Below, piece after piece: positions 160-34,355 of a stretch of 60,119 nucleotides of DNA; within the stretch, counting starts at the first letter, position 1; each line of letters starts with the position of its first letter. The translations under genes and the position numbers were made by a program. The DNA is from Octopus bimaculoides (taxonomy: Eukaryota), in NCBI RefSeq assembly GCF_001194135.2, contig NC_068985.1, positions 34,805,996-34,866,114 of the forward strand, in the 5' to 3' direction. The notes beneath the pieces are model-generated. The model was not told the origin of the DNA and searched no databases. It saw nothing but the letters and a program-made list of their open reading frames with translations.

Positions 160-201
160 ACATAGATGATGTTTATGACAGTGTTTCAAGGGAACCTGAA
201 G
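160..201 (+). CDS. Gene 1 micro-exon B1 (42 nt, phase 1-1): (D)IDDVYDSVSREPE, tyrosine-motif segment of a putative receptor cytoplasmic tail
   Basis: ttcttacag|...|gtaagt canonical sites; length a multiple of 3; homologous to three other copies (6662, 9154, 16307) with conserved splice sites; the phase-0 frame hits TAG, fixing the frame. Confidence 0.8.
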
Positions 202-466
202 GTAAGTGCATAAGCACTCAGTTAAAAAATTACATGCACTGGAGCAATAGTTCGCAAATATCATGGTTTATTGTTTCATTGAGTACTATAGACAGCTTAA
301 TGTATGCATTTGATCATTTATTTCAGTCATTGCATTGCAGCCATGCTAATGCCTCACCTTGAACAAATATTAGTTTCTTATGCCAGACTGCAAAGCTCTC
401 TTGATATATAAGAACCTTGGCAAAGTGGCCTCACCTGTGCTTGTGCCACGTAAAAAGCAATAAGTC

Positions 467-795
467 TGTAGTGACGTCACATTGGCGCCAAAAGGCCGAC
501 GCCATTGCTGAATCCTTAACCATGCATGCGTGGGTTTCAACATCGAAGCGTTCCCGCTATTAGACTGTCTCTTACCAAGCCAGACAGCGACCAAGCAAGA
601 CGTCTAAGCAAGCTCTCCCATTTGAGTGTGGTTGAACCAAGTTGTCTCTATAACGACACCAGCTCGAAGAACCGTACATCTACATTTCAGGCTACTCTAA
701 AACCGGACAATTAGAAGCTGTTTTATTTTCCACTGAACAATAAATATTTGTTGTTGTTGATCAGTTTGGAGTTTCTGCGTTCAGTTCTCTTCCAA
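467..795. mobile_element. CpG-rich intronic insertion, possible solo LTR
   Basis: Starts TGTAG, AATAAA near 739, many intact CpGs against a CpG-depleted background; no TSD found; end approximate. Confidence 0.3.
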
Positions 796-1291
796 TTTAA
801 TGTAGGAAAGTTAGGTGTATATCTAAAGATATATAACCCACTCTCCTAAAAGTCCAATCTGCTGAGTGGTTGGTGTTAAGAAGGGATTCCAGCTGTAAAA
901 TTCCTGCCAAATGACTTATAGAATTTTGGTGCAGTCTTCTGCCTGATCTGTGCTTGTCAAACTGTCCGACCCATGCCAGTATGGAAGGTGGACATTAAAT
1001 GACGATGATGATGATGATGTTGATGATATGCATATGTTCATACAGTAGGCTTCTTTCAGTTTCTTTCTGCCAAATCCACTCATGAGGTTTTGGTTGGCCT
1101 GAAGTTATACAAGAAAATGGAATTGGACTGAACCAGAGCCTTATCACATAGTAATGCCTGTGCCTTTGTATGATTATATATAAACTATAGAATTTATTTT
1201 TTGGGCTTCTTTCTATGCAACAACAAAAATTTAAATCATCCTCTCAAAACAATAGATATGCACATTTTTATATAATTTCTTGTTGTTGTGA

Positions 1292-1345
1292 AAGTGCAGC
1301 ATGCTGAAGTTAGTGCGCATGAATATTTATATATAAAAGAAACGG
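1292..1345 (+). pseudogene. Degenerate copy of micro-exon A (A1): (E)VQHAEVSAHEYLYIKET
   Basis: Ungapped 54-nt alignment to A2/A3, but the acceptor position reads GA and the donor reads CTAAGT; upstream flank 1040-1290 is homologous to 5870-6070. Confidence 0.65.
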
Positions 1346-1599
1346 CTAAGTCTAGACTGTTGAATGGCATCCCAGTCAAGATGGTATTTTTTCTTCTCTT
1401 ACTCTTCTTTTTTGCACACATCTACAAAATGACTTTCTAAAATGAAATTCCATTATGCAGCTGAGGAGTACATTTTCATTACACATTTTATGTAGTGTTC
1501 TCACTACATGAATAAATGAAGTTTGTACGAAACGTACGAACTGCTATAACCTATTGAATTTCTGTTGCTTTTCTTCAAATATATATATATGTTATTATA

Positions 1600-1850
1600 N
1601 NNNNNNNNNNNNNNNNNNNNNNNNNNNNNNNNNNNNNNNNNNNNNNNNNNNNNNNNNNNNNNNNNNNNNNNNNNNNNNNNNNNNNNNNNNNNNNNNNNNN
1701 NNNNNNNNNNNNNNNNNNNNNNNNNNNNNNNNNNNNNNNNNNNNNNNNNNNNNNNNNNNNNNNNNNNNNNNNNNNNNNNNNNNNNNNNNNNNNNNNNNNN
1801 NNNNNNNNNNNNNNNNNNNNNNNNNNNNNNNNNNNNNNNNNNNNNNNNNN
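1600..1850. other. Assembly gap (N run)
   Basis: 251 N flanked by (TA)n. Confidence 1.
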
Positions 1851-1889
1851 ATATACATATATATATAATATACTGTGCATGAGACCATA

Positions 1890-2550
1890 ACCCGTAGCCT
1901 TTTCCAGGGGTGTGGCCAGCCCACTTATGCGTACCTTTCCTTCTTTGGACACAAAACCCTGCTTGCGTAGACCTGTTGAGGCTAGTGAAATCAAAATCAA
2001 AATCAAACCAAATTTGATGACTGGCATCCATACCAACCTTCCTTCATTGGATACTAAACCCAGCTTGCAAAGACCTGTTGGGTCAAGTGAGATCGAAACT
2101 GAACCAAATTCGATGACTGGCACCAATGCCAGTGGAGCACTAACAGGACTATCTGAGTGGGATCACTGCCAGAATAGTGGACTTACTCCCGTGCCGGTGA
2201 CACGTAAAAAGCACCATTTGAGTGTAATCGCTTCCAGCTTCGCTTTACTGGCACTTGTGCCGGTGGCATGTGAACTAAATATTGGACTAATTCCTGTGCA
2301 GGTGGCACATAAAAAACACCATTTGAGCGTGGCCGTTGTCAGTACCGCCAGACTGGCCCTCGAGGTGGTGGCACGTAAAAAGCACCCACTAGACTCTCAT
2401 AGTGGTTGGTGTTAGGAAGGGCATCCAGCTGTAGAAACTCTGCCAAATCAGATTGGAGTCTGGTGTAGCCATCCGCTTCGCCAGTCCCCAGTCAAATCGT
2501 CCAACCCATGCTAGCATGGAAAGCGGATGTTAAATGATGATGATGATGAT
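1890..2550 (+). mobile_element. RTE-LINE 3' UTR / shared SINE tail ending in (ATG)n
   Basis: Same modules as the 3' end of the RTE at 38450-39058, including an internal ~95-bp tandem duplication. Confidence 0.75.
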
Positions 2551-3589
2551 GATATATATATAGATAGATATATATAGATATATTCACACACACACACATG
2601 AAAGGCTTCTTTCAGTTTCCATATATCTAATCTGCTCATAAGGCTTTCACCCGCCCAGGGATATAGTAAAATACTCTCATAGTGGGACTGAACCCAGATC
2701 ATGTGTTTCAGAAGTAAGCTTCTTACCACTTAGCCACACCTGCAAAACTTTAAGAATGGAAAAGATCTCATTTCATGTACAACAAACTTCTTGCGGAAAT
2801 TCATATCTAACTCTGATATTTTAGGCTTTTATTAATCCTAAACTGTGTGTTCCACCCACATGCAACAAGAAAACAATTCATATGCTCTACCTCAACAAAT
2901 CAGCCTACATCTCTACATCTCTTCTCTTCCTCACATTTCTTCCTTCATAAACTATGCCTAGCTGTCACTCCTCAATCCTGTCCTCACGGCCCTGCTCCTC
3001 TGTATCATGGCTATCCGGTAGCCCTCCCAACTCTATATATACCCAGGTTTTCACCACTCACATCCTCTCTCCACTTTTAATCACACTTACTTTGCAATAT
3101 CTTGCCGCTTATGTTATGGTGTTTGAACCTCAAGGGAATAGCATGGCACTTCCTTTACGCAATCATCCCATTTATATTCTAATCCCCATCCATTGTGAGT
3201 ATGCCCAGCATTTTGCCACCATCTCTACCCTGCTGTCTCATACTCTCTCTTCGGTGCACCTACTTTTGTCTTCATTCCTGATTTCTCTATCTCTCTCTCT
3301 CTGGCCAGGTAACCTTGTATCTCCTCTACAACTACACACATGTTTCTGTCTCTCTGTCTCACTGTAACCTTTCTAACCCATTAATCATCCATGAACTCAA
3401 AAGGGTTAATTAGGTTAAGCTTTATTTGTGAAAAACTGTTGTTTTGAATTTGCTGCAGAAAGTGGTCTACATTTGTGGTGTTGAGTGTGTTTGGGGGTGC
3501 TAGGAATGTGGCTCCAATATCAAGGGGGCAGCAGCCTGAAAAAGTTTGGGAACCACTGCTCTAAAGCAAAGGGCAGTAGTGTATTTATA

Positions 3590-4245
3590 TGAAGTTAAGT
3601 GTATGTCCAATCATAGAGTGGCCAGTGGTTTCACATCCACTAGCCCCATGGATGACTTGTCAGAATCTAAAGCCCAAGACAAATATAATTCTTCAACTCT
3701 GGGAGGAAGGAATCTATTACAGTCAGTTAGTTTAATAAGTAACCAAAGAATAAGCAATCTGGGTCAGCAAGGATGGGTTATCTCCCTTACACTAGTTCAC
3801 CTTCAATTGATTCTTGGCCTGGAGATGTTCTTGCTAGTGTTGCTGGAGCTGTCATCAATGCTGTAATCATCAGTGCTCTTGTGGTGATCATCTGTTGATG
3901 TAGTGTAGGCACTGCTGTCACTGGTGGTGATGTGGGTGCCATTGTTTGTAATACTAGGCATGGGGTTGGTAGCCTCACTGATGCTGCTTTTGTTGGAATG
4001 GTCATCATCTTCGGCTATAGTGCTGATGCTGAGGTCATTGGTGTAATTGCTGGAGTTTCTGCCGCTGTTGCTGCTGCTGTTACTGTTGTCATTGATGTTA
4101 TTGGATGATCCACTGCTGCTATTACTATGGTTGCTAAGTGTCTGAGTATTACCACAGACTCACTGAAGGCTCCTTCGGCCTTGCATTGTCCCCCACCACT
4201 GGGAAGTCATTGCATATTCTCTGCAAGAGCAACTAGCCAGGAGAA
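3590..4245 (-). mobile_element. Penelope-like element: inverted GIY-YIG N-terminal part, S/N/T-rich linker and 3' end
   Basis: CSC...PVVGGQCKAE motif (frameshifted); homologous to 21550-21950 and 22220-22320. Confidence 0.65.
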
Positions 4246-4269
4246 TGGTACTTTTCAATAAAGATTTGA

Positions 4270-5110
4270 CATGGGTCAAACAATCCAACCCTGAGAGCTC
4301 CTTCAAAAGGTGATGGGAACCTACAACAGCACCAACGTATGTGATCTCATTGGACTGTACATTCAGGATACCTTAGGGAAGAAGTTCTCTTTGTTCATTT
4401 TTGGTCTCTGGAGAGATGATGCTCTGGCCATCTTTAGAGGAGCCAAAAAACACACACTTGATAGGCTTAGAAAGGACCTGATTAGCACCTTAGGCTCCAT
4501 GGAACTCAAAATTACTACTGAGACTAACATCACCACCATAGACATCCTTAGATATTACTCTAGATATACACACAGGCCCTACCACAAGCCAAATGAGAGG
4601 CTTTCCTACATCTACACAGCTTCCTGCCCACTCCCTATTGTGTTCAAGAACCTAGTGAAGGGTATCAGCAAGATCTCGAAATTATCCTCAAGTCAAGAAA
4701 GTTTCGACACTGCAGCCCCACTGGCATTGGCATTCAGTGAGTTTAAGGACTGCATCACCTACATACTGGACCCTAGCACCAATAAAAGAAGTGCCACTGG
4801 AGCGCCGTTTGGTTTACTCCACTCCTCTCACTCAACGTCAAAATTTGTGTGGGAAGACTACTCCTCAGGTTAGTAGACAAACACTTCATGCAGACACACA
4901 GGTATATATGTTTGTTCAATAGGCACAACCTAAGGGTCTCTTTTAGTTGCACACCCAACATGAAAAGTATATTAGCAAATATCCATAAAATGTGGCAGCA
5001 ACAACATTTCCATGTCCAGAGCCAAGTGAAGATGTATCAGAAATGTGAACACAACCAATGCTCATGCCTGGAAATTGCTAAAAGAATGCATAATTATGTA
5101 GCTTAATATG
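4270..5110 (+). mobile_element. Penelope-like reverse transcriptase fragment (degenerate)
   Basis: ORF 4310-4873: MGTYNSTNVCDLIGLY...GLWRDDALA...PYHKPNERLSYI, matching the PLE MGSY.GAE.C.LVGL / YRDDGL / Y.KPN...YI motifs. Confidence 0.85.
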
Positions 5111-5639
5111 TACCAAAAACACATGTGAGCTCCATCTTTATACTTTATTGCTTCAGATCAAGTGCCAAAGCGTAGTCACATAGCCAGCAGCAAATAATGA
5201 ATTTAAACTGTGTACTATATGGTTTCAGAGTTAGGAAAATTTTACTGTGTAAGTTATGGGGGTAAAAGATTAGAATAATTTATTACCAGTGGTGCACATG
5301 CATACTAAAAGTCATAAGATGACATATTTTCATATATAAGAGTGTATAGAGATTTATACACAGAGAGAAGAACCTTGACAGGACTTACTTATGGATTCTT
5401 TTTGTGATCCCACCAATGAACTACGAATGACAAATTAATTTATTTGCTCGTTAATAGAGAAGCTCGAGTATGAGATTAATTGATAATTTTTTCTTTGGTT
5501 CTATTCATTCTAGTACCATTATCAGCATACCTTTAGAATTATTTTTTCATGGTTTGGATTTAACTGCCCTTTTTAGCATGTAAGAAGTCCTGTCAAGAGT
5601 CTTCTCTATATCTCTCTGATTAAATCTTTATACACTCCT

Positions 5640-5674
<35 letters not shown>

Positions 5675-5684
5675 ATCTAAAAAA

Positions 5685-5870
5685 ATGAAGAAAAACACAA
5701 GAAGAGAAAAACAACAACATGAGGATGTGGTACATGCAAAGTATTAAAAGACGCTCAGGGAAGGAAAGAAAGGTTGTTTTATGTTTTGAGTAAAGCTCTT
5801 CTTCAGAAACAAGAGACAGAGGAAAGTCCTAGAGAAAAGGAAAACGGAAGAAAAAATTTGCCAATAATCC
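5685..5870 (-). mobile_element. Short Penelope-derived non-autonomous repeat, copy 1
   Basis: Clear similarity to 55390-55570; carries a hammerhead-like core. Confidence 0.6.
5779..5806 (-). ncRNA. Decayed minimal hammerhead ribozyme motif
   Basis: Minus strand CTGAAGAAGAGCTTTACTCAAAACATAA; differs from CTGAAGAAGAGCTTTGCTCGAAACGTAA by G>A changes, two of them at CpGs. Confidence 0.4.
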
Positions 5871-6072
5871 ATGCCAAATCACCTCATGAGGTTTTGGTTG
5901 AACTGTGGCTATAGAAGAAAATGGAGTGGGACTGAACTGGAGCCATGTGGTTAGATAGCAAGATTCTTAACACATACCAAGGCCTGCATCTATGCATGTT
6001 TATATATAAAATATATAATTTATTTGTTTCTTTTTTGCTTCTTTCTATGCAACATCAAACAATAAATATGCC

Positions 6073-6350
6073 TAATTACCTCCACCTTAGCGAAGGTGGA
6101 GGTATTGTTTTCAGTTGTGTTTGTTTGTTTGTCCATGGATATCTCAAGAACTGCTGGACAGATTCAGGAATGTTTGGTCTCGTGACTAGCACAAACTGAT
6201 TAGGTTTTGGAATCGATCTGGTACCGGACAAGGATTCTTGATTATTTTTCTGGTTTTTTACTTAATTTTTGAGAGTGGTCGGGTTCATTTCAGATATTGT
6301 CATTTAAAAATTCATCTCTGGCTAATCGTTGAGAGGACATCGGTGTTACC
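6073..6350. mobile_element. Helentron-associated (HINE-like) non-autonomous element
   Basis: Perfect 12-bp hairpin TACCTCCACCTT-AGCG-AAGGTGGAGGTA (6077-6104) followed by (GTTT)-like repeat; absent from the paralogous flank at 1230-1290; related to 45655. Confidence 0.55.
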
Positions 6351-6368
6351 TTGTTTTTGATACTTTAG

Positions 6369-6422
6369 AAGAGCAACATGCTGAAGTAAGTGATCCTGAA
6401 TACTTATATATGAAAGTACCAG
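6369..6422 (+). CDS. Gene 1 micro-exon A2 (54 nt, phase 1-1): (E)EQHAEVSDPEYLYMKVP; GC donor
   Basis: tactttag| acceptor; CAG|GCAAG donor at the position where A3 has GG|GTAAG; four synonymous differences from A3 in the EQHAEV..PEY part; internal GAA|GTAAGT at 6385/6386. Confidence 0.7.
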
Positions 6423-6661
6423 GCAAGAACTGTCAATATTGTTAGTACACAGAATGATCTTAGAAATCATCTTGAAGACAGAAAGCTAACAATTACGAAA
6501 TGCATCATACTGGCACTTTTGCCTATCAATGCATGTATTTGTGTGTGAGTGTGTTTGAGTCTATCTCATTAGTGTTTATTATAGTTGTCTCTGCACAATA
6601 TCAACATAGTATAAATGTTATTTATAGCCATGTATTTAATTCTATTTTTTATTTTTTAAAG

Positions 6662-6703
6662 ACATGGATGGTGTTTATGTTAATGTTTCAAAGAACTCTG
6701 GTG
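6662..6703 (+). CDS. Gene 1 micro-exon B2 (42 nt, phase 1-1): (D)MDGVYVNVSKNSG
   Basis: attttttaaag|...|gtaagt; paralogous to B1/B3/B4 with a conserved upstream intron. Confidence 0.8.
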
Positions 6704-6939
6704 GTAAGTACAAAAGCAATCCATTAATAAAATTACATTCATTAGAGCAAGAGTTAGCAAATGCCTTGGTTCGTTCTTTGTCTGAGTAGTATAGGCAACT
6801 TAATATATGTCTTATCTTTTACTTGTTTTAGTCATGGTACTTTGGCCATGCAGAAGCACTGTCTTGAAGGGTTTAGTCCATCAAATCTACTCAAGTACTT
6901 ATTCTATTGGTTTCTTTTGCCAAACTTTTATGGCAGACG

Positions 6940-7820
6940 AACATTTTTTTTTATGTCCTGTACCCATATATGCATGTATGTATACATATAGATGTAGGTA
7001 TGTGCATATATGTATGGATATATGCATATATCTATATATTATTTATATTATTATATGATCGAATGCCACGCATCCTTTTCCAAGTAAGTTTTATTGTAAT
7101 AATTACAATGCGCACTCTTCTACTATCTCTCTCCCTCTCTTGTTCTTCATCCTTTCTGTTTTTCTCTCCCACCCTGTCCTTATTCTTCTCTCCCTTTCAC
7201 CATTCCATCTCTCTCTCTCACTCCTCCTTTTCCTCCTTGACTCTCTCGTCGCTGACACGTGATGAAAGGGGTTCTTTCTTTCTGCCCACTGGTCTTCCTA
7301 AAGAACAGACGTGTTTTTTCGGTCTCTTCTACTTAGCGTTCATAATAATTTTTCTATCATCTTGGCTCAACAGACCTCACCGTTTGTTTTTACTGTCTTG
7401 TTCTCACTGTCTTGTTTTTACTGTTTTTATTGTTTTTACTGTCTTGTTCTCACTGTTCTGTTCTTGTTAACACTTTCACCCTCTGCAAAAAATTCCAAAT
7501 TTTATTTAATTTGCTTTCCGGGAAGGACTGTTCCAACAAAGTCACATATTGTCCTTGCTTTTGAAATGCGGAGTAGATGGAACAGGGACAACTGACGAAG
7601 GGATATACTCTTTATGCTGCATGTCTCGTTTCTCTGTTTGTTTTTTCGTTGTTTGAAACAAGTTCGTTTTCTGTTTTCATTTTTCTGTTTTCGTTTCTCA
7701 TTGTATTTAACATTTTCTTTTGATGTCCTGTACCCATATATGCCTGTATGTATACATATAGATGTAGGTATGTACATATATGTATGGATATATGCATATA
7801 TCTATATATTATTTATATTA
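6940..7820. repeat. ~111-bp direct repeats (6940-7050, 7709-7820) bracketing a ~660-bp pyrimidine-rich insert
   Basis: aacatttt..atgtcctgtacccatatatgc...tatattatttatatta present twice. Confidence 0.8.
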
Positions 7821-7840
7821 ATATATATATNNNNNNNNNN

Positions 7841-7881
<41 letters not shown>

Positions 7882-8863
7882 TTTTTTTATTGATATATAA
7901 TGGTTTTCTTTCAGCTTCTTGTCACTGGCACAGAGCTATAGTAAATTACACTTGCCTAAGGTGTCTCACAGTGGGAATGAACCACACAGCTACACCTGCA
8001 AAACTTTGAAAAGGTTAAAATTTCATAGCATATACAATACAATTCTTGCAGACATTCCTACTTAACTGTGATATTTTACCCTTCTTTTAAACTTTACCCT
8101 TAATATCGCAGTTCATAAGCATATATTTTAAAACCTTTATATATACAAATAAACCAAATAATTATATAACTAATACTGGATTCAGTGGATGTTTGCCTAG
8201 ACATGAGACACAAAGTATGGAAGAAATTTGCTATGGTGAATGTGATCAGTTGTTGTTGTTGAGTATTCAAAGTCCCTCCTGCTTATGAATTACTCTAACA
8301 AGAAAGTGATCTTAGAAGGAATTTTATTTCTGTGAAGGTATTCGTTAATGGTATCTCATAATGATAACATTGTCACCTTTAAATATCAGTTAAATATTGA
8401 AGTGATGGAAATAGTACAACACCCTACCAAATATTGATATAATCAACTTTAGTGTCAGTGCATTCTGAGATCAAATCCCATTGAAGTAAATTTTGTTTAA
8501 TTAGCCTCTCAATAAGTACTACTTTTACCTAATTAATAGCACTTTCCTTATAAAATAGAATTTTTAGTGCCACTTTACTGAGGAACCCTTTTTCTAAACT
8601 CTAACTTTGAAATGGCATATTAACCAAAATTGCCTTTGAGTCCTTTTGTTCATACCAAATAAATTTCTTGGGTAATACTTATCTTTTTACAATATGTGAA
8701 TGAGAGCGGTTAAAAGACCTCTATTGTGCATGGACTTCCACTGGATTTAGATAACTTCTGTTTCTAAATTCATGTTTCTATATAAAATATATATACATGC
8801 TACTATCTGTGCCACTTTCAAAATATTTAGACTATCCTTTCATTTAATTTCTTGATGCTGTAG

Positions 8864-8917
8864 AAGAACAACATGCTGAAGTTAATGAACCAGAATATTT
8901 TTGTGTGGAAGATCTGG
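8864..8917 (+). CDS. Gene 1 micro-exon A3 (54 nt, phase 1-1): (E)EQHAEVNEPEYFCVEDL
   Basis: atttcttgatgctgtag|...|gtaagt canonical; the ~240-nt A-B intron is conserved with unit 2. Confidence 0.8.
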
Positions 8918-9153
8918 GTAAGTAGAATCAATATTGTTAATACACAACATGGTCTTAGAAATAATCTTAAATAAAAACAGAAAGCTAACAATAATGAAAT
9001 GTATCACTGTTAATATATGTGTATATGCATGTATGTGTGTGTAAGTGTGTTTGATTTTATCTCATTAGTATTTACTATGGTAGTATCAGTACATTAACAT
9101 AATATAAATGTTATTTGTAGCCATGTTTTTAATTCTTTTTGAATTTCTTAAAG

Positions 9154-9195
9154 ACATGGATGATGCTCATTTCAACATTTCAAGGAAACCTGATG
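9154..9195 (+). CDS. Gene 1 micro-exon B3 (42 nt, phase 1-1): (D)MDDAHFNISRKPD, Tyr replaced by His
   Basis: tttcttaaag|...|gtaagt; TAT>CAT at the position that is Tyr in B1/B2/B4. Confidence 0.75.
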
Positions 9196-9233
9196 GTAAG
9201 TTTGCAAATATCTTGGTTCATTCTTTCTTTGAG

Positions 9234-11580
9234 TATCAGTCAGTGTGAAGAAGGCTAACAGGAGCTACTTTCATGTCATTGGTTTCTCAGTTATCGTCCT
9301 TCCCTACCCAATCACTTATCAACACGTATGTGGACAAGGGAGAGAGAAAAATCAAGTTAAACATTGCAGAACCAAACAACATTTTTACTAGCTTCTGAGG
9401 AGGTAAACAAACCAATGCCGATTGTCAAGTGGTAGTGGGGAACAAAAACAAACAGAAAATCATAACAACCAAGCACAAACCAAATTTAATTTTGGAAACT
9501 TACATTGATGCCTAAATAACATTATATGTAAATGACATATCAAAACTAATTTATCCTAGTGATAATTTTATCAAAGCTAACGAACCTTTTGTTTAGTGAG
9601 AAGGATGAAACTGCTATTTTTATTTTTATTGTTTTTGAAAGTTTAGGAATATCACATGTCTCTGAAGCAACTGCTATTCTTAGTTCATTACTCTGATTTT
9701 TGTAGGTCTGGTACATACACGATTTTTTGCATAATTCAATTTGAAAAAAAAAAAAAACTGCTCACATTTATAAGTTGTCAAAAATTGAGATGCAAATTTC
9801 AAAACATTTTTATGTAAAGCAAGGAATTTCTCAGGATTGAACGATTTGTAGAAGTCCAATAAAGACAGATAATTATATTTCGATTTTGTTAAGCAAATCA
9901 TTTCTAATTGTAAGGAATCTGGAACCTCCTCAGGACACATATCAAAAGGTGTTTCAAAAACACATAGTTTGATTTTATTATCTTGTATTTCTTCAAATTT
10001 CTTCAAAAGACTTACACACTCTTCAGTGTATTTCTCTGTTGATTCTGGATTTTGTTCACTCAATTTGGGAAAATGTGGTGAAAAAATTTCTTTTCAATTG
10101 TATGACAAATAAATGAAGCATCAATTCAAAACTTTTGATATGGGAAAGCAAACTGGTAATTAACCTTGTAGAAGATACTATAGTTTCAAGTTCAAATTAT
10201 TTAAATGACTAGTTATATCTACTAAAAGACTTTGAAACTTTTTATCTTCCAGTTCTGCAATAGGAACACCTTTAACATCAATAAAAATTTTCACTTTTTC
10301 CTTCAGTTCATAAAATCACTTAAGCATTTGGGGCCTTACTTAACCACCTAACTTCACTATGGTACAATAAATCCCCATATTTGGCTTCAAGATCTTTCAA
10401 AAATTCTTTAAATTCCCTATTATTCAACCCTTTGCTTTTTATCAAATTAATGGCCTTAGTTACAACTTTCATTACACCGCCCATCTTCAGAGATTTTGCA
10501 CTTAAACTTTTCATATGAATAAAGTAGTGACACAAAGACATTTCTTAAATCCATTCTTAATCAGAGCTCCAAACCCTTTTTCACAACCTACCATAGACGG
10601 AGCACTATTTTTCTCATATGGTAAATATTTCATTTTTTTCAAATGGTAAATCAAAATTCTTTAAGGCTGAGTCAACCATTTGAAATAAATCTTCACTTCT
10701 AGATGATTTCAAGGCAAGAAATTCTTCCCAAATGTTGAATTTTGTGGTTGTTCTACGTATAAGCATTGCTATCTAAGCAGTATTAAACAGATCAGTTGTA
10801 TCATCAATAGCTAATAAATACAATACGAATTCTGCTAAATCAGATTTTAGAGAATTTTGACTATCTTTAATGTGATCAGAAACAGTTTTTGATAAGTTAA
10901 TATTTCCAAACAAACTAAGTTTTTCTGAGAATATATTCTCAACAGCAGTAAGGGTACATTCTTTTGCAAATTCCTCATTACTATGTAATTTGAGTCTTTT
11001 AGCAATATTTTTGCATACTGCATAAGTAGCTCAAGTTACTGATTCACTTTCAAGAATTGGCTTTAAAAAAAGGCTTGTCTTTTGGTCAGATTTTCTTTCA
11101 AGGTAGCTATCTTGTCTAAACATTCAGATTCTATGTTTGTTGCAAATAAGACAAATACACTTGTTATCTATTTAAAAAAAAAAATGATAAAAAAGCTCAG
11201 TCCATTTTTCATCAAAGTATGTTCATCAGCACTTCTGTTTTTAGGATTTTCATAACCACTTGCCATACTGATAACAGTATTGAAAAATTGATTTAACAAA
11301 GTTAATGATGTTACAATCTGGTTAAATTTATATTATCACTTTTGGTGCCTTAGAAAAACAAAAGCAAACTGACTTGCATCATAATGAATGCATTTAGTGT
11401 AGTAAAAAATAAAAATCTGCAAAAAATTAAGATATTGATTAGATCTGCAAGGTTTAACTTGATTTTTCTCACTCCATTGTCCACATAGGTGTTGATAAAT
11501 GAGTGGGTAGGGAAGGACGATAAGTGATAAGCCAATGGCATGAAAGTAGCTCCTGTTGACCTTCTTGGCACTGACTGATA
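9234..11580 (-). mobile_element. hAT (Buster/Charlie/SPIN, GTF2IRD2-like) transposon remnant with 140-bp TIRs
   Basis: Minus-strand motifs LAIDDTTD, EFLAL, DLLYHSEVRWLS, FLTTYKCEQFF; 9234-9373 and the reverse complement of 11441-11580 align ungapped with 16 mismatches. Confidence 0.85.
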
Positions 11581-12414
11581 GCAAAAATGTGACACCCCTT
11601 ATTTTTCACTGCTTTTTCTGAAAAAAGTTAGTAATAATTTTTTATAATCCTGTTCACAAAGCACCAAATTAATAGTTTCTGTTTCAATGGAGCATTACGA
11701 AGTTGTCGTTGCTTTTTAATAGATTTTTAAATAGTTTTTGCCTATCAAGTGACAGAAAGAGGGTGAGTGTCGATTTTGGAGATTTTTTTTTTTTGTAAAA
11801 ACGTGAAAAATGAAATAGGGAGGGAAATTTTAAATACTTGGGGTTCTTGGATATGAGTAATCTTTACACAGTATCTTCAAATTTCACTTCATATAAAAAT
11901 TTCAATACATGCAATGTATTTTTAGTTTTCTCTACTAGAGTGTAGTTGGGTCTCATGTGGGGTGATACAAACCTAGTAGTATGTATTTTATAATGAAAAC
12001 AAAATTTCCACTCAAATTGGCAATTACTGGACGATATCTGTTTGAGTCTGACCATTTTAAGTTGTAGTGGTAATGCGACCTATGTCACAAATGGGCATAC
12101 AAGTATTGTATAAATTTTATAATTGAAAAATTTACTATATTTTGTATAAACAAGTATACCAGCCTGCAGGTGCAATAAGATGGGCTCGTTGGTGCAATTG
12201 TACCCATGGTAGGGGGTTTCCCAACTCCTGGCTTAGAGAATAGAATTTTGGGTGCTACTTCATTGAGAAACCATCTCCCCAAGCACTTATTTTGAAATGG
12301 TATATTAACTGAAATTACTCTTTGTTTCTTCTTGTCCATTCCAAATATATTTACTAGGCAATACTTTTCTTTTCCACAATACATGAATGAGAGGATGTAG
12401 GACATATACTATGT

Positions 12415-12700
12415 GCAGGTGTGGCTGTGTGGTAAGAAGCTTGCTTCCTATACACATAGTTCTGGGTTCAGTCTCACTGTGTAGTACCTTGAGTAAGTGC
12501 CTTCTTCTATAGCCTTGGGCTAACTAAAGCCTTGTGAATAGATTTGGTAGACAAAAACTGAAAGAAGCCCATTGTATGTATGTGTGTGTGTGTCTGTGTT
12601 TGTTCCTCCCCCACACACATACTGCTTGACAACTGTTGTTAGTGTGTTTACGGTCCAATAACTTAGTGGTTAGGCAAAAGAGACCCGATAGAATAAGCAC
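12415..12700 (+). mobile_element. tRNA-derived SINE (octopus-type)
   Basis: gtggctgtgtggtaagaagcttgcttcc...ctgggttcagtc...actgaaagaagcc head, repeated many times in the window. Confidence 0.75.
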
Positions 12701-12769
12701 CAGATTTTTAAAAAATCAATGAAGAGAGAAGGTCAGTAGGAGTGAAGAGAGGAAGTAGGTGTCAGTTGA

Positions 12770-13200
12770 AGAGAGGAGGTGAGTTGAGCCCATATGGCGC
12801 AAAGGAGTGAAGAGAGAAGATTAATTCCTGTTCACGGCGAAGGCAGGAGTCTAGATGACCCCTGTGCAAAGACAATCTGAATGCAGACAGGTATTGTAGT
12901 GAATGACCAGTAGAGTGTAAACGGTGCAAGACCAGGGTGTCATTGCCAAGTCTGATGTCTCGGAGATGCTCCATGAACCAGTCAGCCAAGTGGTGTCCCA
13001 TTTGACTGATATACAGAGAAGGGCAGAAAGAGCAGGAGATGCTGCAAGTGATGTTGCTAGAAGTGCAGGTAAAGGAGTCGGTGATATGATAGGGACGATG
13101 ATGGGTCGCTGTAAGGATGGTGGTGCTAGAGAGGCAGGGGCAAGTGCAGCAGTGTGGGTGGGAGCAGGGGAATGAGCCAGATTGGGAGGTGGGATTAGAG
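12770..13200 (-). mobile_element. Penelope-like (Poseidon-type) GIY-YIG endonuclease fragment
   Basis: ORF 12762-13217: FTCTSSNITCSISCSFCPSLYISQMGHHLADWFMEHLRDIR...EQELIFSL..P.GLN. Confidence 0.8.
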
Positions 13201-15450
13201 AAGAAACTGTAGACCAATATGAGTCGTATTTATCTGACAGCCCTACTCTTTAAAGAAAAGAGTCTACATCCCTCAACAGACAAATGATTAAATAGAAGCA
13301 TGCTCCACCATAGCCAATACTAAACTTAGACAGATTTTAGAACAATACACTAGAAGACAGAGTGATAGAGAGGCATAGAAACTTGACAAGAAATCTGCAA
13401 GTGATTTGCACAAGCTCATACAGCACAACAAAAATAGGAAAGTCATGTGCTTCTCCATGGACAAGTCCAGCAGAAAGACAACCTGCTGAACTACATCCAG
13501 GCAATGCAACCCTACATCACCAATATGAGGGAAACAATGGTACAGGAATATGAGGAGAGAGAGAAGATCCTCAATGTTCATATGATAATATCAAATATCC
13601 TAGGGACTGAAAAGCACACAGCTAACAACCTCCAGGCCACTAATAATGACATCCTACAAGGACCATAATGTAACAGCTGATTCAGTGACAGGACCACCAA
13701 TGAGACTGATCTGTGGAGCCAATTTTGCCAACAACTACTGGATCTCCTACTTCCTCTCTACGATCATACGTCCTCTGATCAAAATGGCCTTGTATGTGTG
13801 TGACAGCAAAGAGAGTCTCTTCAGCAGGATCAATGAAAGCAACCATTCTTACAACTTGAGGGATGCATAAGAGGCAATATGGACGAAGTATCCTTATACC
13901 AATCTATTGATTTTGACTTTGCTGTGGATAAATGTGTGAAGGTGATCAAGGAGAGTGACATGGAGTTTTGTGGTGTTCACAAGGAACTGGGCCTCCTCCT
14001 GAGACTGACATGTGACAATGATTACTTAGATGAACATGACCTTAATTGTTTCTGACCCACTAGATCAGTAAAAGGTTGACCCACTACTATAACTTCTATG
14101 GCCAAGAAAACCCAGAGAGAGAGAGAGGTGGAACAGATGGATCAAAGCTACACAGACCCCTAAAAACGCTGATCAGGTTAAAAAGATGTTCGCACATGTA
14201 GTGGATGCAAGTACCAAAATCGCACTCAAGTTTAATGATGAGATATGCACCCAAGAGGAAGCTGCAGCCATTAATGTCAGTATCGCTGGTGATGTGGCTT
14301 ATCTATATATGGTATGATGGGATATGAAACTCAAAGAGAAATTAGCAGAGAACTCCATAACACAAACTATGTACTCCCGCTATGTGAATGATATCAACAT
14401 AGTAGCCAAAGCTACTATGATGATGATCTAGAAGCTAACACTATATAGAGCATCCAGTAAATAGCTAACTCTATCCACCAGAGTATTAAAGTAATGATAG
14501 ACTGCCCAAACAAGCACCCAAACTGTAGGCTACCAGTTTTAGACATGGAACTCTTGCAGGAAACTAAGAACAGTATGGTCGAGATTCTTCATTCCCATTA
14601 TGCCAAATCCATGGCCTCTAATTGCTTGGTCCACAAAAACACAACTATTGCGGATAACTCCAAGTGCAATATATTTATAGCAGACTTCATGAGAGTGAGG
14701 AGCAATGTGTCTCGCATGTGCAACTGTATGGAATTGGAAAGATACAGACAATACTTCACCCAAAGAATTAGAGTGTACAAAGGAGCCAGAACTATATGAA
14801 GCCATCATAGAGAGTTATGCAAAAGGGTATACAGGAGTAAATACTGGAAAAGCACAGAAAGGACCAGAAAGAAAGTTACATAAGGTCAACTTATGATATG
14901 ACAACAAAAAATACCAGAGTATTATGTTCATTGATGCTACCTCTGGCAGTCAACTAGCATACTCTTTTAGAAAAACATTAGATAAGGCTAAAGTTGTTAG
15001 CTGTGCACTTTTGCCCTGGGATGAACACACAGGTTAACTGTAAGGTTAGGAATATAGTGTATAGCTTATGATGTACTGAGTGGTGGTGCAGAAACATGAC
15101 ACCTATTTACATAGGAGATACAGCATGCAGCATGGGGGAGCATATAGGTAAACACTGGTGGGAGCTCAAAGAAGAGAAAGGTTTGTCAATTCTCTACCAA
15201 CATGCTCAAGCAGAACATAACGGCTTGCTTAATAGCATAGGGGTTGCGGTATTATCAACACATAGAACTGACATGGTACAGATCACAGAGGCTAGAAACA
15301 TAGCAATAGACTGATCGTGTCTCAATAGAAAACATGAATGGAACAATAACACCTGCCACCACACCACACATCCTGACAGCTAAAGACAGAAGGAAGAAAA
15401 AAACAGATACAAACAGTGTAATACATACACAGTAAAGAAATATCCACATA
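13200..15450 (+). mobile_element. Penelope-like element, second family: decayed RT plus GIY-YIG
   Basis: YSRYVNDINI (YVDD-like), LPVLDM..ILHSHYAKSMAS, IYIGDTACSMGEH...QITEA motifs with many stops and frameshifts. Confidence 0.8.
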
Positions 15451-15979
15451 TGTAGCATAGGTATAAGAAATAGAGCTAGATTAAAAAAAATATATAAGGG
15501 GCATGGATATAAACAACATTGGAAATGAGCCCATATACATACACCGAGACAGAGAGACAGAGGAATAGTACCAAAAATCAGTGTCGTGAGCAGCAGCAGC
15601 AGGAGAGGGGATGAGGTTGAGGGAAGGGTCATAGTGGTATTAAGAACACTGACACACATGCACATGTACACACACACAAATATAGATGCAAATGCATGCA
15701 CATATAAGGATATACATCATAGAAGAACGGAATGGACTAAGTGGTGCAAGAGCATGCATGGAAACGGAAAGTGTTGTTGATGAGATTACAGATTTGTGAT
15801 GAAAGATTTTAGCAATAAATGAGTGAAGAACAAATATATGGTGCAGGTTTTTATTTGGGAAAAGCAAAAAAAAAGTGATCTTCCCAAAGTACAACAATAT
15901 TTGTTTCAACACATGGTTTCACATTGGGAATCTTGCAACACAAATTCTCAAACATGTGTATATATATATATATATACAC

Positions 15980-16140
15980 GATGGTCTTCTTTCAGTTTCC
16001 ATTTACCAAATGCATTCTGAAGACTTTGGTCAGCCCGAGGCTATAGTAGAAGACACTTGCCCAAGGTCCTATGCTGTGGGACTGAACCCAGGACCATGTG
16101 GTTGGGAAGCAAGCTTCTTACCACATAGTCACACCTGTGC
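15980..16140 (-). mobile_element. tRNA-derived SINE head
   Basis: Reverse complement of the 12415-type head. Confidence 0.75.
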
Positions 16141-16306
16141 CTATTGCATCTTTTTCCTATTAATGTATGTGTGTGTATGTGCATGAGTGAATGTGTTTGA
16201 GTCTATTTCATTAGCATTTATTCTGGTAGTATCAACACACTACTAAAATATTTTAGATATTATCTATAACTATGTTACATATTTTTCTTTTTTTAATTTC
16301 TTAAAG

Positions 16307-16348
16307 ACTTGGATGATGTTTATGTTAATGTTTCAAAGAAACCTGATG
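16307..16348 (+). CDS. Gene 1 micro-exon B4 (42 nt, phase 1-1): (D)LDDVYVNVSKKPD
   Basis: tttcttaaag|...|gtaagt; upstream 16150-16306 is homologous to the introns before B1-B3. Confidence 0.8.
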
Positions 16349-17306
16349 GTAAGTATATAGAAAATCCATTACTAAAATTATATTCATTTCCCAGCCTGGG
16401 TCTGGAATCAGTCCTGGTAAAGTTAGCAAAACTTTTGGAAGCTCTATTTATACAAATAAAGAAAATACTGATTAAACTAGTTTTGAGATCACTAGACATG
16501 AAACACAATGTATAGAACAGTGTTGCAATGGTGAATCTTTCACACCTTGATCAGCTACTGTTTTGCATACCCATAACCAGTCCTGCTCATGGACATCACT
16601 GAAATGAAGGTAATATTGAGAGTCAGAATGGCTTCCTTAATGCTATCATGTTTAAATATCACTATAATATCATATTTGAGTAACAGAAATAGTAGAGTAC
16701 TATATGCAATACTTGGAGATATTAAATTTAATCCTATAGCATTCTTTGCTCAAATACCACTGATGTCAGTTTTATCTTTCATCTTCTTCTGATCTATACA
16801 ATATTTATCAATGGTCTACTAGATTGATTTTGTCTACTAATTTTTGCCCACTGAGAAAAATCATTATTTTTAATGTTGTTTATATAATTTCACATTTTGT
16901 TTTTGTTTTCGTTGGGCTTTGTAGTATATTGTATATATGAAATACTCTATATTTTATATTTAGCCACTATGTTCTACACTTCTACACACTGAAGATAGCA
17001 ATCTACTGGAATTTACGAAAACAAGAAAGAAATTAAGTAAATCCATAAATCTATTTTACTTCAATTTTTTGATATTGGTTATATCAAGATATAATCTTAA
17101 AGCATATTTATTTTGGCATGAATTTCTTACTGTTCTTTTATGTTTTGTTATCTTGAAAGTAGATAGTGTCAGAATAGTTGAGATATGATTAATTTGTCCT
17201 TTCATATTGTAAATATTGTTATTCTTGAATTTCATATTGCATTTGAAATCAAACTGTTTTATTGATTTTTCTTCTTTCATAATATTTCGTTAGTGAAGAT
17301 GTCATG

Positions 17307-18174
17307 TATGAGGTGGTATTGAAAAGTTTCAGGACTAGTTATGTTTAATAAAAAATAACTTATTTACTTGAGTTTTAACATTAACTCCTTCAAAATAGTT
17401 ACCTTGTGCAGCAATACATTGGTCCCAGCATGCTTGCCACTTTTTCAAACCAGCCTAGATGTCATCTTCTGTAAGTGAGATGAGGACCTTCTGTGATTTG
17501 CTCTGGGTCTGAACAACGTTGTAAAAACGTCAACCTTTGAACTATATTTTCATCTTGGGGGAAGAGATGGAATTCTGCAGGTGCTAAATCTGGGAAATAG
17601 GGCTGGTGCAGAAGCAATAACATGTTTTCAGTGAGAAACCCAAGAGTGAGGAGAGCTCAGTGACAGGATGCATTTTTGTTGTGAAGAATCCAATACTTTG
17701 TGCTCTACAGATCTGATCGCTTTCACTGAATGTCCTCCCTCAAATGCTTCAAAATGTTTGAATGGTCTGGCCCAGGTGGAGGAATTCTTGATACACAATA
17801 CCACATTTCTGGGGTGACACTTGTGGCAGGTTTTCCAGATTGCTTATCGTCTTCCAGGGACGTTCTTCAGCTCTTGAAGCACCCATGCCACTCAAAACAC
17901 TGCGTCTGATCCATTGCCTCATCACTGTAAGCTTGCCAAAACATGCTTAATGTCTCTGTAGCAGACTTCCCAAGTTTAACACAAAATTTCACATTAGCTC
18001 TTTGTTCCTATCTATGACAAAATCACAGACTACAACATACACATGATCATAAAAATACAACTTTCACAACTTGCAAAGTAAATATAATGATGTCACTCAG
18101 CACAATGCCTCATGGTGTATGTAACGGTGTGTTGCCATCTGTTGGCAGCAGGAACGTTTTGATACCACCTCATA
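17307..18174 (-). mobile_element. Mariner internal-deletion derivative
   Basis: Terminal TATGAGGTGGTATTGAAAAG / TTTTGATACCACCTCATA inverted repeats; same family as 28146-28995. Confidence 0.85.
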
Positions 18175-25183: not shown

Positions 25184-25258
25184 GTTACCAGTGAAGGTCC
25201 ATGTTTTCAGATGAACAAGAAGAACCTAGAACCTTGTGATATAGTATATAACACCTAG
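25184..25258 (+). CDS. Candidate terminal exon of gene 1: VTSEGPCFQMNKKNLEPCDIVYNT* in phase 0 (phase 1 gives xYQ*; alternative acceptor at 25211 gives DEQEEPRTL*)
   Basis: Strong atttttattcttttattttgtag| acceptor followed by AT-rich, repeat-free UTR-like sequence; ATTAAA at 25468. Confidence 0.5.
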   Translation, partial: VTSEGPCFQMNKKNLEPCDIVYNT

Positions 25259-33890: not shown

Positions 33891-33953
33891 TAACCCTAAC
33901 CCTAACCCTAACTCTAACCCGAACCCTAACCCTAGGGTTAGGGTTAGGGTTAA
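33891..33953. repeat. Interstitial telomere-like repeat, (CCCTAA)~7 followed by (TTAGGG)3, forming a palindrome
   Basis: Symmetry centre CCCT|AGGG at 33933/33934. Confidence 0.9.
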
Positions 33954-34018: not shown

Positions 34019-34355
34019 NNNNNNNNNNNNNNNNNNNNNNNNNNNNNNNNNNNNNNNNNNNNNNNNNNNNNNNNNNNNNNNNNNNNNNNNNNNNNNNNNN
34101 NNNNNNNNNNNNNNNNNNNNNNNNNNNNNNNNNNNNNNNNNNNNNNNNNNNNNNNNNNNNNNNNNNNNNNNNNNNNNNNNNNNNNNNNNNNNNNNNNNNN
34201 NNNNNNNNNNNNNNNNNNNNNNNNNNNNNNNNNNNNNNNNNNNNNNNNNNNNNNNNNNNNNNNNNNNNNNNNNNNNNNNNNNNNNNNNNNNNNNNNNNNN
34301 NNNNNNNNNNNNNNNNNNNNNNNNNNNNNNNNNNNNNNNNNNNNNNNNNNNNNNN
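34019..34355. other. Assembly gap (N run)
   Basis: 337 N. Confidence 1.

What the first reader, a model, noticed from the sequence alone, without database searches (positions are those of the whole stretch)
160..16348. Receptor tail built by serial duplication of two tyrosine-motif micro-exons
Seen: four 42-nt B exons and three 54-nt A exons, all symmetric phase 1-1, in duplicated intron blocks (1-360 ~ 6530-6870 ~ 9000-9236 ~ 16150-16440; 1040-1345 ~ 5870-6422; 2640-2840 ~ 7930-8090). Spliced, they give DIDDVYDSVSREPE-EEQHAEVSDPEYLYMKVP-DMDGVYVNVSKNSG-EEQHAEVNEPEYFCVEDL-DMDDAHFNISRKPD-DLDDVYVNVSKKPD. Established: acidic residues before Tyr favour Src/Syk-type phosphorylation, and pY-x-N is the Grb2 SH2 preference (YVNV matches). 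Inference: a modular phosphotyrosine docking tail whose motif count can vary by exon duplication and by frame-preserving skipping. None of these exons appears as a recognisable ORF.
Basis: partly seen in the sequence, partly recalled or inferred. Interest (0 to 1): 0.82.

Follow-up and report, generated by a model that had tools for sequence, protein, structure and literature searches.

The report
Octopus Ig-receptor tail made of duplicated micro-exons
The tiny repeated exons are real: they encode the end of the cytoplasmic tail of an annotated but unstudied Octopus bimaculoides immunoglobulin-type membrane receptor, whose tyrosine motifs sit one per exon and can be added, lost or skipped without breaking the reading frame.

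Summary
The core observation holds. Spliced in phase 1, window exons B1 160-201, B2 6662-6703, A2 8864-8917, B3 9154-9195 and B4 16307-16348, plus a terminal exon at 16964-16992 or 25184-25194, reproduce exactly the C-termini of RefSeq isoforms X1, X3 and X5 of O. bimaculoides LOC106879981. That protein is about 980 aa, with a signal peptide, Ig domains, one TM helix and a 178-aa acidic tail.

A0 (1292-1345) has no splice sites. A1 (6369-6422) has a GC donor and is in no retrieved protein.

Both assembly gaps lie in introns.

The gene belongs to a tandem cluster found only in Octopus. All members carry tails of alternating A and B units, and their annotated isoforms differ by whole units. Across the family the Tyr and the +2 Asn of B, and the Tyr of A, are among the best-kept positions.

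Phosphotyrosine docking (Grb2-type YxN, PI3K-type YxxM) is a reasonable inference but is untested. The gene is annotated yet uncharacterised, and I found no paper on it. It is a new member of a known kind, with moderate interest.

The parts
160..201 (+). B1 micro-exon (42 nt, phase 1-1), DIDDVYDSVSREPE. It is a cassette exon, absent from isoform X5. Its motif is YDSV: the +2 Asn is lost.
1292..1345 (+). A0, a decayed A-type copy. The frame is open, but there is no AG acceptor and no GT donor. It is not in any protein.
1600..1850 (.). Assembly gap inside the B1-B2 intron, flanked by AT microsatellite.
6369..6422 (+). A1, an A-type copy (EEQHAEVSDPEYLYMKVP) with an AG acceptor but a GC donor. 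It is absent from all five RefSeq isoforms and from every retrieved family protein. It is either unused or only rarely used.
6662..6703 (+). B2 micro-exon, DMDGVYVNVSKNSG (intact YxN).
7831..7840 (.). Assembly gap inside the B2-A2 intron, within a TA microsatellite.
8864..8917 (+). A2 micro-exon (54 nt, phase 1-1), EEQHAEVNEPEYFCVEDL.
9154..9195 (+). B3 micro-exon, DMDDAHFNISRKPD. The motif Tyr is replaced by His here. The corresponding O. sinensis unit has Tyr (DMDDAYGNISRKPD).
16307..16348 (+). B4 micro-exon, DLDDVYVNVSKKPD (intact YxN).
16964..16992 (+). Terminal coding segment a, (A)TMFYTSTH plus stop. Used in isoforms X1, X2, X4 and X5.
25184..25194 (+). Alternative terminal coding segment b, (G)YQ plus stop, after the acceptor ttttgtag. 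Used in isoform X3. A -YQ end is the end most often seen in the family models (six of those retrieved).
6423..6661 (+). A-to-B intron (239 nt). It is 70-79% identical to its paralogous copies, for example 8918-9153, and to O. vulgaris units. It has a branch-point-like TACTAAC/CTAAC about 65 nt before the B exon. Homologous blocks precede B1 (1-159) and B4 (16150-16306).

Best explanation
**Shown.** The window holds the 3' end of Octopus bimaculoides LOC106879981.
- The gene encodes a type I membrane protein of about 980 aa: signal peptide, multi-Ig ectodomain, one TM helix and a 178-aa acidic, tyrosine-rich cytoplasmic tail.
- The tail is encoded one motif per micro-exon by two alternating exon types, both in phase 1-1.
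  - B is 42 nt, with family consensus D-M-D-x-x-Y-x-N-x-S-x-K-P-x.
  - A is 54-60 nt, with family consensus E-E-Q-x-A-E-x-S-E-P-x-Y-L-x-M-K.
- The exon types arose by tandem duplication of an A-B genomic unit, about 2.5 kb where repeats have not inserted.
- In the window B1, B2, A2, B3 and B4 are used, followed by one of two terminal exons. A1 and A0 are unused or decayed copies.
- Because every unit is symmetric, copies can be gained, lost or skipped without a frameshift. Paralogues and species differ in unit number, and annotated isoforms differ by whole units.

**Inferred.**
- On ligand engagement a Src/Syk-type kinase phosphorylates the acidic-context tyrosines.
- pY-x-N in B units recruits a Grb2/Drk-type SH2 adaptor. 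pY-x-x-M in A units recruits a PI3K p85-type SH2.
- The tail would then act as a built-in multivalent scaffold. Its number of docking sites would be set by exon copy number and alternative splicing.
For: - **Exact match to annotated proteins.** The window splice products are identical to the C-termini of XP_052824250.1 (X1), XP_052824252.1 (X3) and XP_052824254.1 (X5).
- **Receptor architecture.** Ig_3 scores 77.6 bits (cut-off 30) and I-set 55.8 bits (cut-off 23.7). The TM segment TIIGCVIGIVLLIILVLLI has a Kyte-Doolittle mean of 3.37. The tail is 24% Asp+Glu with 11 Tyr.
- **Family membership.** An exhaustive phmmer search of the tail against 1.84 billion representatives finds 10 proteins, all Octopus and all with A/B tails.
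- **Family-wide exon architecture.** The same one-unit-one-exon layout, with AG and GTAAG sites, is present in an O. vulgaris paralogue locus (L001).
- **Motif conservation.** Among 38 distinct B units, Tyr is kept in 87%, the +2 Asn in 89%, Asp3 in 92% and Pro13 in 95%, against 37-55% at positions 1, 4, 5, 7, 9, 11 and 14. Among 31 distinct A units, Tyr12 is kept in 97% and Met15 in 71%.
- **Synonymous variation.** TAT/TAC and AAT/AAC both occur at the conserved Tyr and Asn codons.
- **Whole-unit isoform differences.** X5 lacks B1, and LOC106874069 and LOC106869178 isoforms differ by whole units.
- **SH2 specificity.** Grb2 SH2 recognises pYxN (PMC10968029). The p85 preference for pYxxM is from my own knowledge (Songyang et al. 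1993).
Against: - **No clear constraint between copies.** Among the window's B copies pN is about equal to pS. Exon identity (74-88%) is no higher than intron identity (70-84%). Only the A copies hint at constraint (pS 0.41-0.58 against pN 0.15-0.27).
- **Motif decay.** B1 has lost Asn and B3 has lost Tyr, so only two of the four window B exons carry YxN. The one used A exon in the window has YFCV, not YxxM.
- **Alternative reading of the motifs.** Every motif also fits the endocytic YxxPhi signal.
- **Model quality.** RefSeq models are computational and I could not inspect reads. Some family models are clearly chimeric.
- **No direct data.** There is no phosphorylation, binding or expression evidence.
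Confidence: 0.7

Rival explanations
1. The repeated tyrosine motifs are mainly tyrosine-based sorting signals (YxxPhi, bound unphosphorylated by the mu subunit of AP-2 or other clathrin adaptors). The protein would be an endocytic or scavenging receptor, and the number of units would tune internalisation rather than SH2 docking.
For: In the LOC106879981 tail 9 of 11 tyrosines fit YxxPhi (YVNV, YLPM, YDSV, YFCV and others), and the same holds across the family. The YxxPhi consensus itself is from my own knowledge.
Against: - YxxPhi does not explain the 89% conservation of Asn at +2 in B units, nor the conserved acidic residues before the Tyr.
- Eight or more tandem sorting signals in one tail have no obvious rationale.
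- This reading is not exclusive of the main explanation.
Confidence: 0.15
2. Most units are evolutionary baggage. The array would be a neutrally expanding and decaying exon repeat in a disordered tail, with at most one or two functional motifs. Isoform diversity would be splicing noise.
For: - pN is about equal to pS among B copies, and exons are no better conserved than introns.
- B1 and B3 have lost key residues.
- A0 and A1 are decayed or unused copies lying in introns.
- Unit number differs freely between genes.
Against: - Conservation is position-specific: Tyr, Asn, Asp3, Ser10 and Pro13 are kept in 87-95% of 38 distinct B units, while neighbouring positions vary.
- All 7 B copies compared, from two species, keep exactly 42 nt, an open frame and both splice sites, while the flanking introns carry indels.
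Confidence: 0.12
3. It is an inhibitory or activating immunoreceptor of the ITIM/ITAM type, recruiting SHP/SHIP phosphatases or a Syk/Shark kinase rather than Grb2 or PI3K.
For: - The Ig ectodomain plus Tyr-motif tail resembles CD22, PECAM-1, FCRL and Hydractinia Alr proteins (PMC9546547).
- Sporadic [ILVS]xYxx[ILV] matches occur, such as VAYVNL and ISYVNV.
- The A-to-B tyrosine spacing of 8 residues resembles ITAM geometry.
Against: - The -2 position of B units is usually Asp or Gly, and that of A units is Pro, so the ITIM consensus is not a conserved feature.
- There is no ITSM.
- The regex, which allows a wider 6-12 spacing than the published x(6-9), matches only once in eight tails. That one match spans two B units.
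- The +3 residues are Val or Met rather than Leu or Ile.
Confidence: 0.08
4. The units are not expressed exons at all, only splice-site-like duplicated intronic or intergenic sequence swept into automated gene models.
For: I could not view transcript evidence. The first-generation model of this gene (P0016, 798 aa) stops right after the TM. Some family models contain retained-intron or transposon sequence.
Against: - Five isoforms of this gene, and 7-8 RefSeq isoforms of each of two paralogues, use the units consistently.
- Independent annotations of three species and two annotation pipelines contain the same unit types.
- Splice sites and frame are kept in every used copy.
Confidence: 0.03

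Closest known systems
PECAM-1 / CD31 (vertebrate IgSF adhesion/signalling receptor)
   Same: It is a multi-Ig type I receptor. Its cytoplasmic domain is encoded by a series of small exons (exons 9-16), with tyrosines on separate exons. Alternative splicing of whole tail exons, such as the 19-aa exon 14, changes signalling and ligand behaviour (PMC2132561).
   Different: - PECAM-1 tail exons are not serial duplicates of two unit types.
- Its key motifs are ITIMs that recruit SHP-2, not YxN/YxxM.
- There is no detectable sequence homology beyond generic Ig domains.
CD22 / Siglec-2
   Same: It is a multi-Ig receptor whose tail carries several tyrosines, including a Grb2-binding site alongside other motifs (PMC5302901 abstract). 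CD22 Ig domains are among the weak PDB matches (E 1.2e-3).
   Different: CD22 signalling is dominated by three ITIMs. Its tail is not a repeat array. No specific homology was found.
LAT and related transmembrane adaptors (NTAL/LAB) and Shc Tyr317 (own knowledge)
   Same: They have acidic tails with several pY-x-N sites, including the literal YVNV. These bind Grb2/Gads and give multivalent signal assembly.
   Different: - LAT has almost no ectodomain.
- Its sites are not encoded by duplicated micro-exons.
- The exhaustive phmmer search with the octopus tail recovered only Octopus proteins, so the resemblance lies in the motifs, not in ancestry.
Hydractinia Alr family (invertebrate histocompatibility-complex IgSF genes)
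   Same: It is a lineage-specific, tandemly clustered family of single-pass Ig receptors. The family shows recent and ancient duplications, alternative splicing and tyrosine motifs in divergent tails (PMC9546547).
   Different: Alr tails carry ITAM/ITIM motifs and are too diverse to align. The octopus tails are built from two recognisable repeated exon units with YxN/YxxM motifs. No function or polymorphism is known for the octopus genes.

Membership tests
Immunoglobulin-superfamily type I membrane receptor | Ig domains detectable above curated thresholds in the same polypeptide | tested here: met
   For P0025 (isoform X1): Ig_3 77.6 bits (cut-off 30) in 5 stretches, I-set 55.8 (23.7), ig 30.8 (21.8), C2-set_2 25.8 (21). 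The C-terminus of this protein is encoded in the window.
Immunoglobulin-superfamily type I membrane receptor | N-terminal signal peptide, a single TM helix and a cytoplasmic C-terminus | tested here: met
   The N-terminus is hydrophobic (MEFSLLHLRYVLIVRCFCVSL, by inspection). A single strong hydrophobic segment at aa 784-802 has a Kyte-Doolittle mean of 3.37 and is followed by a 178-aa acidic tail. No dedicated signal-peptide or TM predictor was available.
ITIM-bearing inhibitory receptors | Conserved [I/L/V/S]xYxx[I/V/L] in the tail (definition as in PMC9546547) | tested here: not met
   Only sporadic, non-conserved matches were found: a juxtamembrane VMYNKV in this gene and 0-3 per paralogue. 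The unit consensus has Asp or Gly (B) or Pro (A) at -2.
ITAM-bearing activating receptors | Yxx[I/L]x(6-9)Yxx[L/I] | tested here: not met
   The regex, run with a wider 6-12 spacing than the published x(6-9), gives no match in LOC106879981. It gives one match in eight family tails, and that one spans two B units.
Grb2-docking phosphotyrosine scaffolds (LAT, Shc, Gab type) | Several Y-x-N motifs in an acidic context | tested here: met
   There are three YVN in the LOC106879981 tail, two of them in the window (B2, B4). The +2 Asn is kept in 89% of 38 distinct B units. pYxN specificity is from PMC10968029.
Grb2-docking phosphotyrosine scaffolds (LAT, Shc, Gab type) | Tyrosines are phosphorylated and bind a Grb2/Drk SH2 domain | not testable with these tools
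   This needs phosphoproteomics or peptide binding assays.
Grb2-docking phosphotyrosine scaffolds (LAT, Shc, Gab type) | Sequence homology to a known adaptor | tested here: not met
   phmmer of the tail against 1.84 billion representatives gives 10 hits, all uncharacterised Octopus proteins.
PI3K p85-docking tails (YxxM) | Y-x-x-M motifs | tested here: inconclusive
   Met is at +3 in 71% of 31 distinct A units family-wide, and there is one YLPM upstream in this gene. In the window, however, the used A2 has YFCV, and YLYM occurs only in the unused A1.
PECAM-1-like modular tails | Tail encoded by several small exons, with whole exons alternatively spliced | tested here: met
   X5 lacks B1. Paralogue isoforms differ by whole 14-aa and 20-aa units. 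This rests on RefSeq and UniProt models, not on reads I could inspect.

The most novel reading that the evidence does not exclude
The tandem Octopus-only cluster (LOC106869178, LOC106879981, LOC106874069, LOC106874055 and their O. sinensis and O. vulgaris counterparts) could be a cephalopod-invented family of recognition receptors, either immune or allorecognition receptors or neuronal ones. In this reading each receptor carries its own LAT-like multivalent scaffold. The scaffold's valency for Grb2-type and PI3K-type adaptors would be tuned on two time scales: over evolution by micro-exon duplication and decay, and in cells by combinatorial cassette splicing. That would be a mechanism for grading signal strength not described for any receptor family.
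Probability: 0.25. Interest if true: 0.75.

Novelty: new member of a known kind. Interest (0 to 1): 0.5.

Why it matters
Cephalopods have complex brains and no adaptive immunity, and very few of their lineage-specific surface receptors have been characterised.

This finding points to a concrete gene cluster, seen here only in Octopus, of large Ig receptors whose signalling tails are assembled from two interchangeable tyrosine-motif exons. It offers a clean natural system for asking how the number of docking sites on a receptor is set by exon duplication and by alternative splicing.

It also gives octopus biologists defined peptides, exons and isoforms to test in haemocytes or neurons.

On the practical side, it shows that 42-54-nt exons, invisible as ORFs and missed by the first genome annotation, can be recognised from sequence alone.

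Tried and rejected
1. **Word-index protein search.** The search with the 92-aa spliced peptide returned nothing. This was a false negative. The exhaustive phmmer search found the family, and P0013 contains a 60-aa exact match.
2. **Gap-free DNA.** I tried to fetch gap-free DNA or the orthologous locus. LOC106879981 spans 258 kb, the O. sinensis model 780 kb and an O. vulgaris model 144 kb, all too long to be delivered. Two other look-ups had no record. Only a paralogous O. vulgaris locus (L001) was obtained.
3. **Chance or pseudo-exon hypothesis.** Rejected by the exact protein match and by the rarity of such exon-like sites.
4. **Minus-strand gene.** The reverse complement has no AG/GT at the unit borders.
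5. **Hidden B exon in gap 1600-1850.** The sequence after A0 has no homology to the A-to-B introns, so nothing supports it. It cannot be excluded.
6. **dN/dS between the window copies.** Uninformative for B (omega about 1) and only a weak signal for A.
7. **ITIM/ITAM reading.** Motif tests not met.
8. **Specific homology of the ectodomain.** Only generic Ig matches appeared in the PDB (ICAM-1, Robo, Dscam, CD22, E 1e-6 to 1e-3). No non-Octopus relative reached E <= 1e-5.
9. **Literature.** No paper mentions any of six LOC identifiers. Two topic searches found nothing on this family.

Full report
**What the sequence shows**

The window is AT-rich eukaryotic DNA full of transposon debris. It holds LINE reverse-transcriptase and mariner transposase fragments, SINE-like repeats and six N gaps.

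On the + strand there are four 42-nt units:
- B1 160-201
- B2 6662-6703
- B3 9154-9195
- B4 16307-16348

Each follows a pyrimidine tract and AG, and each is followed by GTAAGT.

There are three 54-nt A units, and they are not equivalent:
- A2 (8864-8917) has AG and GTAAGT.
- A1 (6369-6422) has AG but a GC donor.
- A0 (1292-1345) has neither site.

Blastn and six-frame HMM scans find no other copies in the window. A strict scan for symmetric, open, strongly flanked exons finds only 6 on the + strand (3 of them B exons) and 1 on the - strand.

**The gaps**

Gap 1600-1850 lies between B1 and B2, and gap 7831-7840 between B2 and A2. Both are embedded in AT/TA microsatellites. Both are intronic, so no reading frame crosses them.

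Exons on either side of each gap splice into a product identical to proteins annotated on the later chromosome-scale assembly. Order and orientation are therefore consistent. The sequence after A0 has no homology to the A-to-B introns, so nothing indicates a B exon hidden in the first gap. I could not read the gap itself.

**Identity**

The word-index search with the spliced peptide found nothing. This turned out to be a false negative. The exhaustive phmmer search against 1.84 billion representatives found 10 proteins, all from Octopus sinensis, O. vulgaris or O. bimaculoides and all named "uncharacterized" or similar.

A follow-up search returned O. bimaculoides LOC106879981. Splicing the window exons reproduces these C-termini residue for residue:

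| Spliced exons | Isoform | Accession |
|---|---|---|
| B1-B2-A2-B3-B4 + 16964-16992 | X1 | XP_052824250.1 |
| B1-B2-A2-B3-B4 + 25184-25194 | X3 (ends ...KKPDGYQ) | XP_052824252.1 |
| B2-A2-B3-B4 + 16964-16992 (B1 left out) | X5 | XP_052824254.1 |

The window is therefore the 3' end of this gene, which spans 258 kb in GCA_001194135.2.

No retrieved protein contains the A1 or A0 peptide.

**The protein**

Isoform X1 has a hydrophobic N-terminus and several Ig domains above Pfam thresholds (Ig_3 77.6 bits, I-set 55.8 bits). It has one strongly hydrophobic segment at aa 784-802. Its 178-aa tail is 24% Asp+Glu and contains 11 tyrosines.

The tail reads: juxtamembrane region, A, B, A, then B1, B2, A2, B3, B4 and a terminal exon. 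The first three units lie upstream of the window.

The ectodomain has only generic Ig similarity to solved structures (ICAM-1, Robo, Dscam, CD22). It has no non-Octopus relative at E <= 1e-5.

**The family**

The RefSeq accession order is LOC106869178, LOC106879981, LOC106874069, LOC106874055. The window itself contains the first three coding exons of LOC106874069 downstream on the same strand (51342-51422, 55005-55062, 58706-58981). The genes are therefore head-to-tail neighbours.

All members carry A/B tails, but with different unit numbers: from 2-3 up to 10-11 of each type, the largest count coming from a model that is probably chimeric.

In a paralogous O. vulgaris locus (L001) every unit is again a separate exon with AG and GTAAG sites. 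There the A exons are 60 nt because the acceptor lies 6 nt further upstream.

Annotated isoforms of LOC106874069 (8) and LOC106869178 (7 RefSeq, plus several earlier UniProt models) differ precisely by whole 14-aa and 20-aa units and by alternative terminal exons. This is what frame-preserving cassette splicing predicts.

**Constraint**

Between the window's own copies there is no nucleotide-level sign of selection on B. pN is about equal to pS, and exon identity of 74-88% compares with 70-84% in the introns. There is only a hint for A.

B1 has lost the Asn. B3 has His in place of Tyr, whereas the corresponding O. sinensis unit keeps Tyr.

Across the family, however, conservation is sharply position-specific.

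| Unit type | Distinct units | Well-kept positions | Variable positions |
|---|---|---|---|
| B | 38 | Asp3 92%, Tyr6 87%, Asn8 89%, Ser10 89%, Pro13 95% | positions 1, 4, 5, 7, 9, 11, 14 at 37-55% |
| A | 31 | Glu6 97%, Ser8 90%, Tyr12 97%, Met15 71% | several others as low as 29-55% |

All seven B copies compared across two species keep 42 nt, an open frame and both splice sites. They also show synonymous TAT/TAC and AAT/AAC variation at the conserved codons.

**Mechanism**

Shown:
- a receptor-type protein;
- a tail built from two duplicated symmetric micro-exon types;
- gain, loss and decay of units;
- whole-unit isoform differences in the annotations.

Inferred:
- The acidic context makes the tyrosines kinase substrates.
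- pY-x-N in B units docks a Grb2/Drk-type SH2 (specificity: PMC10968029).
- pY-x-x-M in A units docks a p85-type SH2 (own knowledge).
- The tail is then a multivalent scaffold of adjustable valency.

Conservation of the +2 Asn is what favours this reading over a plain YxxPhi sorting signal, although every motif also fits YxxPhi. ITIM and ITAM definitions (PMC9546547) are not met as conserved features.

**Comparison with known systems**

- **PECAM-1.** Its tail is encoded by exons 9-16, with tyrosines on separate, alternatively spliced exons (PMC2132561).
- **CD22.** A multi-Ig receptor whose tail combines ITIMs with a Grb2 site.
- **LAT-type adaptors.** They carry several YVNV-like Grb2 sites (own knowledge).
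- **Hydractinia Alr cluster.** A lineage-specific family of clustered Ig receptors with tyrosine motifs and alternative splicing.

The octopus family works like these but is not homologous to any of them. It differs in building its tail from serial duplicates of two unit types.

**Novelty**

The exons are already in RefSeq. The first-generation model of the gene (P0016, 798 aa) stopped right after the TM, so the tail was missed at first.

No paper mentions these loci, and two topic searches found no description of the family. I rate it a new member of a known kind, with moderate interest.

I could not inspect the transcript evidence behind the models. There are no expression or biochemical data.

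Noticed in passing
window 51342-51422, 55005-55062, 58706-58981 (+): These are the first three coding exons of the neighbouring paralogue LOC106874069: the start codon exon, the signal-peptide exon and the first Ig exon (276 nt, phase 1-1). They match its isoforms at 100%. The window therefore spans the junction of two head-to-tail cluster genes.
   Followed up: partly
window 25184-25194 (+): A tiny alternative terminal coding segment, (G)YQ-stop, lies behind a strong acceptor. A -YQ end (once -YR) closes seven of the retrieved family models in three species, so it is probably the ancestral end of the tail. Its function is unknown.
   Followed up: partly
window 6423-6661, 8918-9153, 1-159, 16150-16306; L001 60699-60942, 67748-67986: The short A-to-B intron is as conserved (70-79%) as the exons among paralogous units and between species. 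It has a branch-point-like TACTAAC/CTAAC about 65 nt upstream of B and an almost invariant block GTGTTTGAGTCTATCTCATTAG. It could be a splicing-regulatory element of the cassette exons, or simply slow neutral decay.
   Followed up: partly
window 8852-8863 versus L001 60633-60644 and 67682-67693: The A-exon acceptor has moved by 6 nt. In O. vulgaris it reads ttgaAG|ctgtgg, giving a 60-nt exon. In the window it reads ctgtAG|, giving a 54-nt exon. The reading frame is kept.
   Followed up: partly
P0001 (O. sinensis LOC115212116), P0008 and P0010 (O. vulgaris): Several public gene models look chimeric.
- P0001 spans 780 kb with another family gene nested inside it, and it strings together tails of several cluster genes.
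- P0008 fuses an LRR/GAIN adhesion-GPCR front to A/B units, intron-like sequence and a stretch that looks transposon-derived. P0010 also carries that stretch.

This could be annotation error or capture of the tail cassette by another gene.
   Followed up: no
P0016 (old O. bimaculoides model of the same gene): The first-generation model (798 aa) ends immediately after the TM helix. The tail micro-exons were therefore missed by the original annotation and added only in the later RefSeq release.
   Followed up: no
window 33891-33934: An interstitial telomere-like repeat, (TAACCC) x 7.3, lies about 85 nt before the assembly gap at 34019-34355.
   Followed up: no
window 6944-7056 and 7714-7826: A 113-nt direct repeat at 96% identity brackets about 660 nt and ends just before the gap at 7831-7840. 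It may be an insertion with a duplicated flank or an assembly artefact.
   Followed up: no
window 37399-38339 (+), 31311-32147 (-), 52591-52884 (+), 17300-18170, 28434-28984: Transposon debris fills most of the window. Pfam hits are a LINE reverse transcriptase (RVT_1, E 4.5e-11) and a mariner transposase (Transposase_1, E 4.3e-12). Related LINE copies also occur in the O. vulgaris locus L001.
   Followed up: partly
tool behaviour: The word-index homology search missed proteins that contain a 60-residue exact match to the query. The exhaustive HMMER search found them. Negative results from the indexed search on short repetitive queries should not be trusted.
   Followed up: yes
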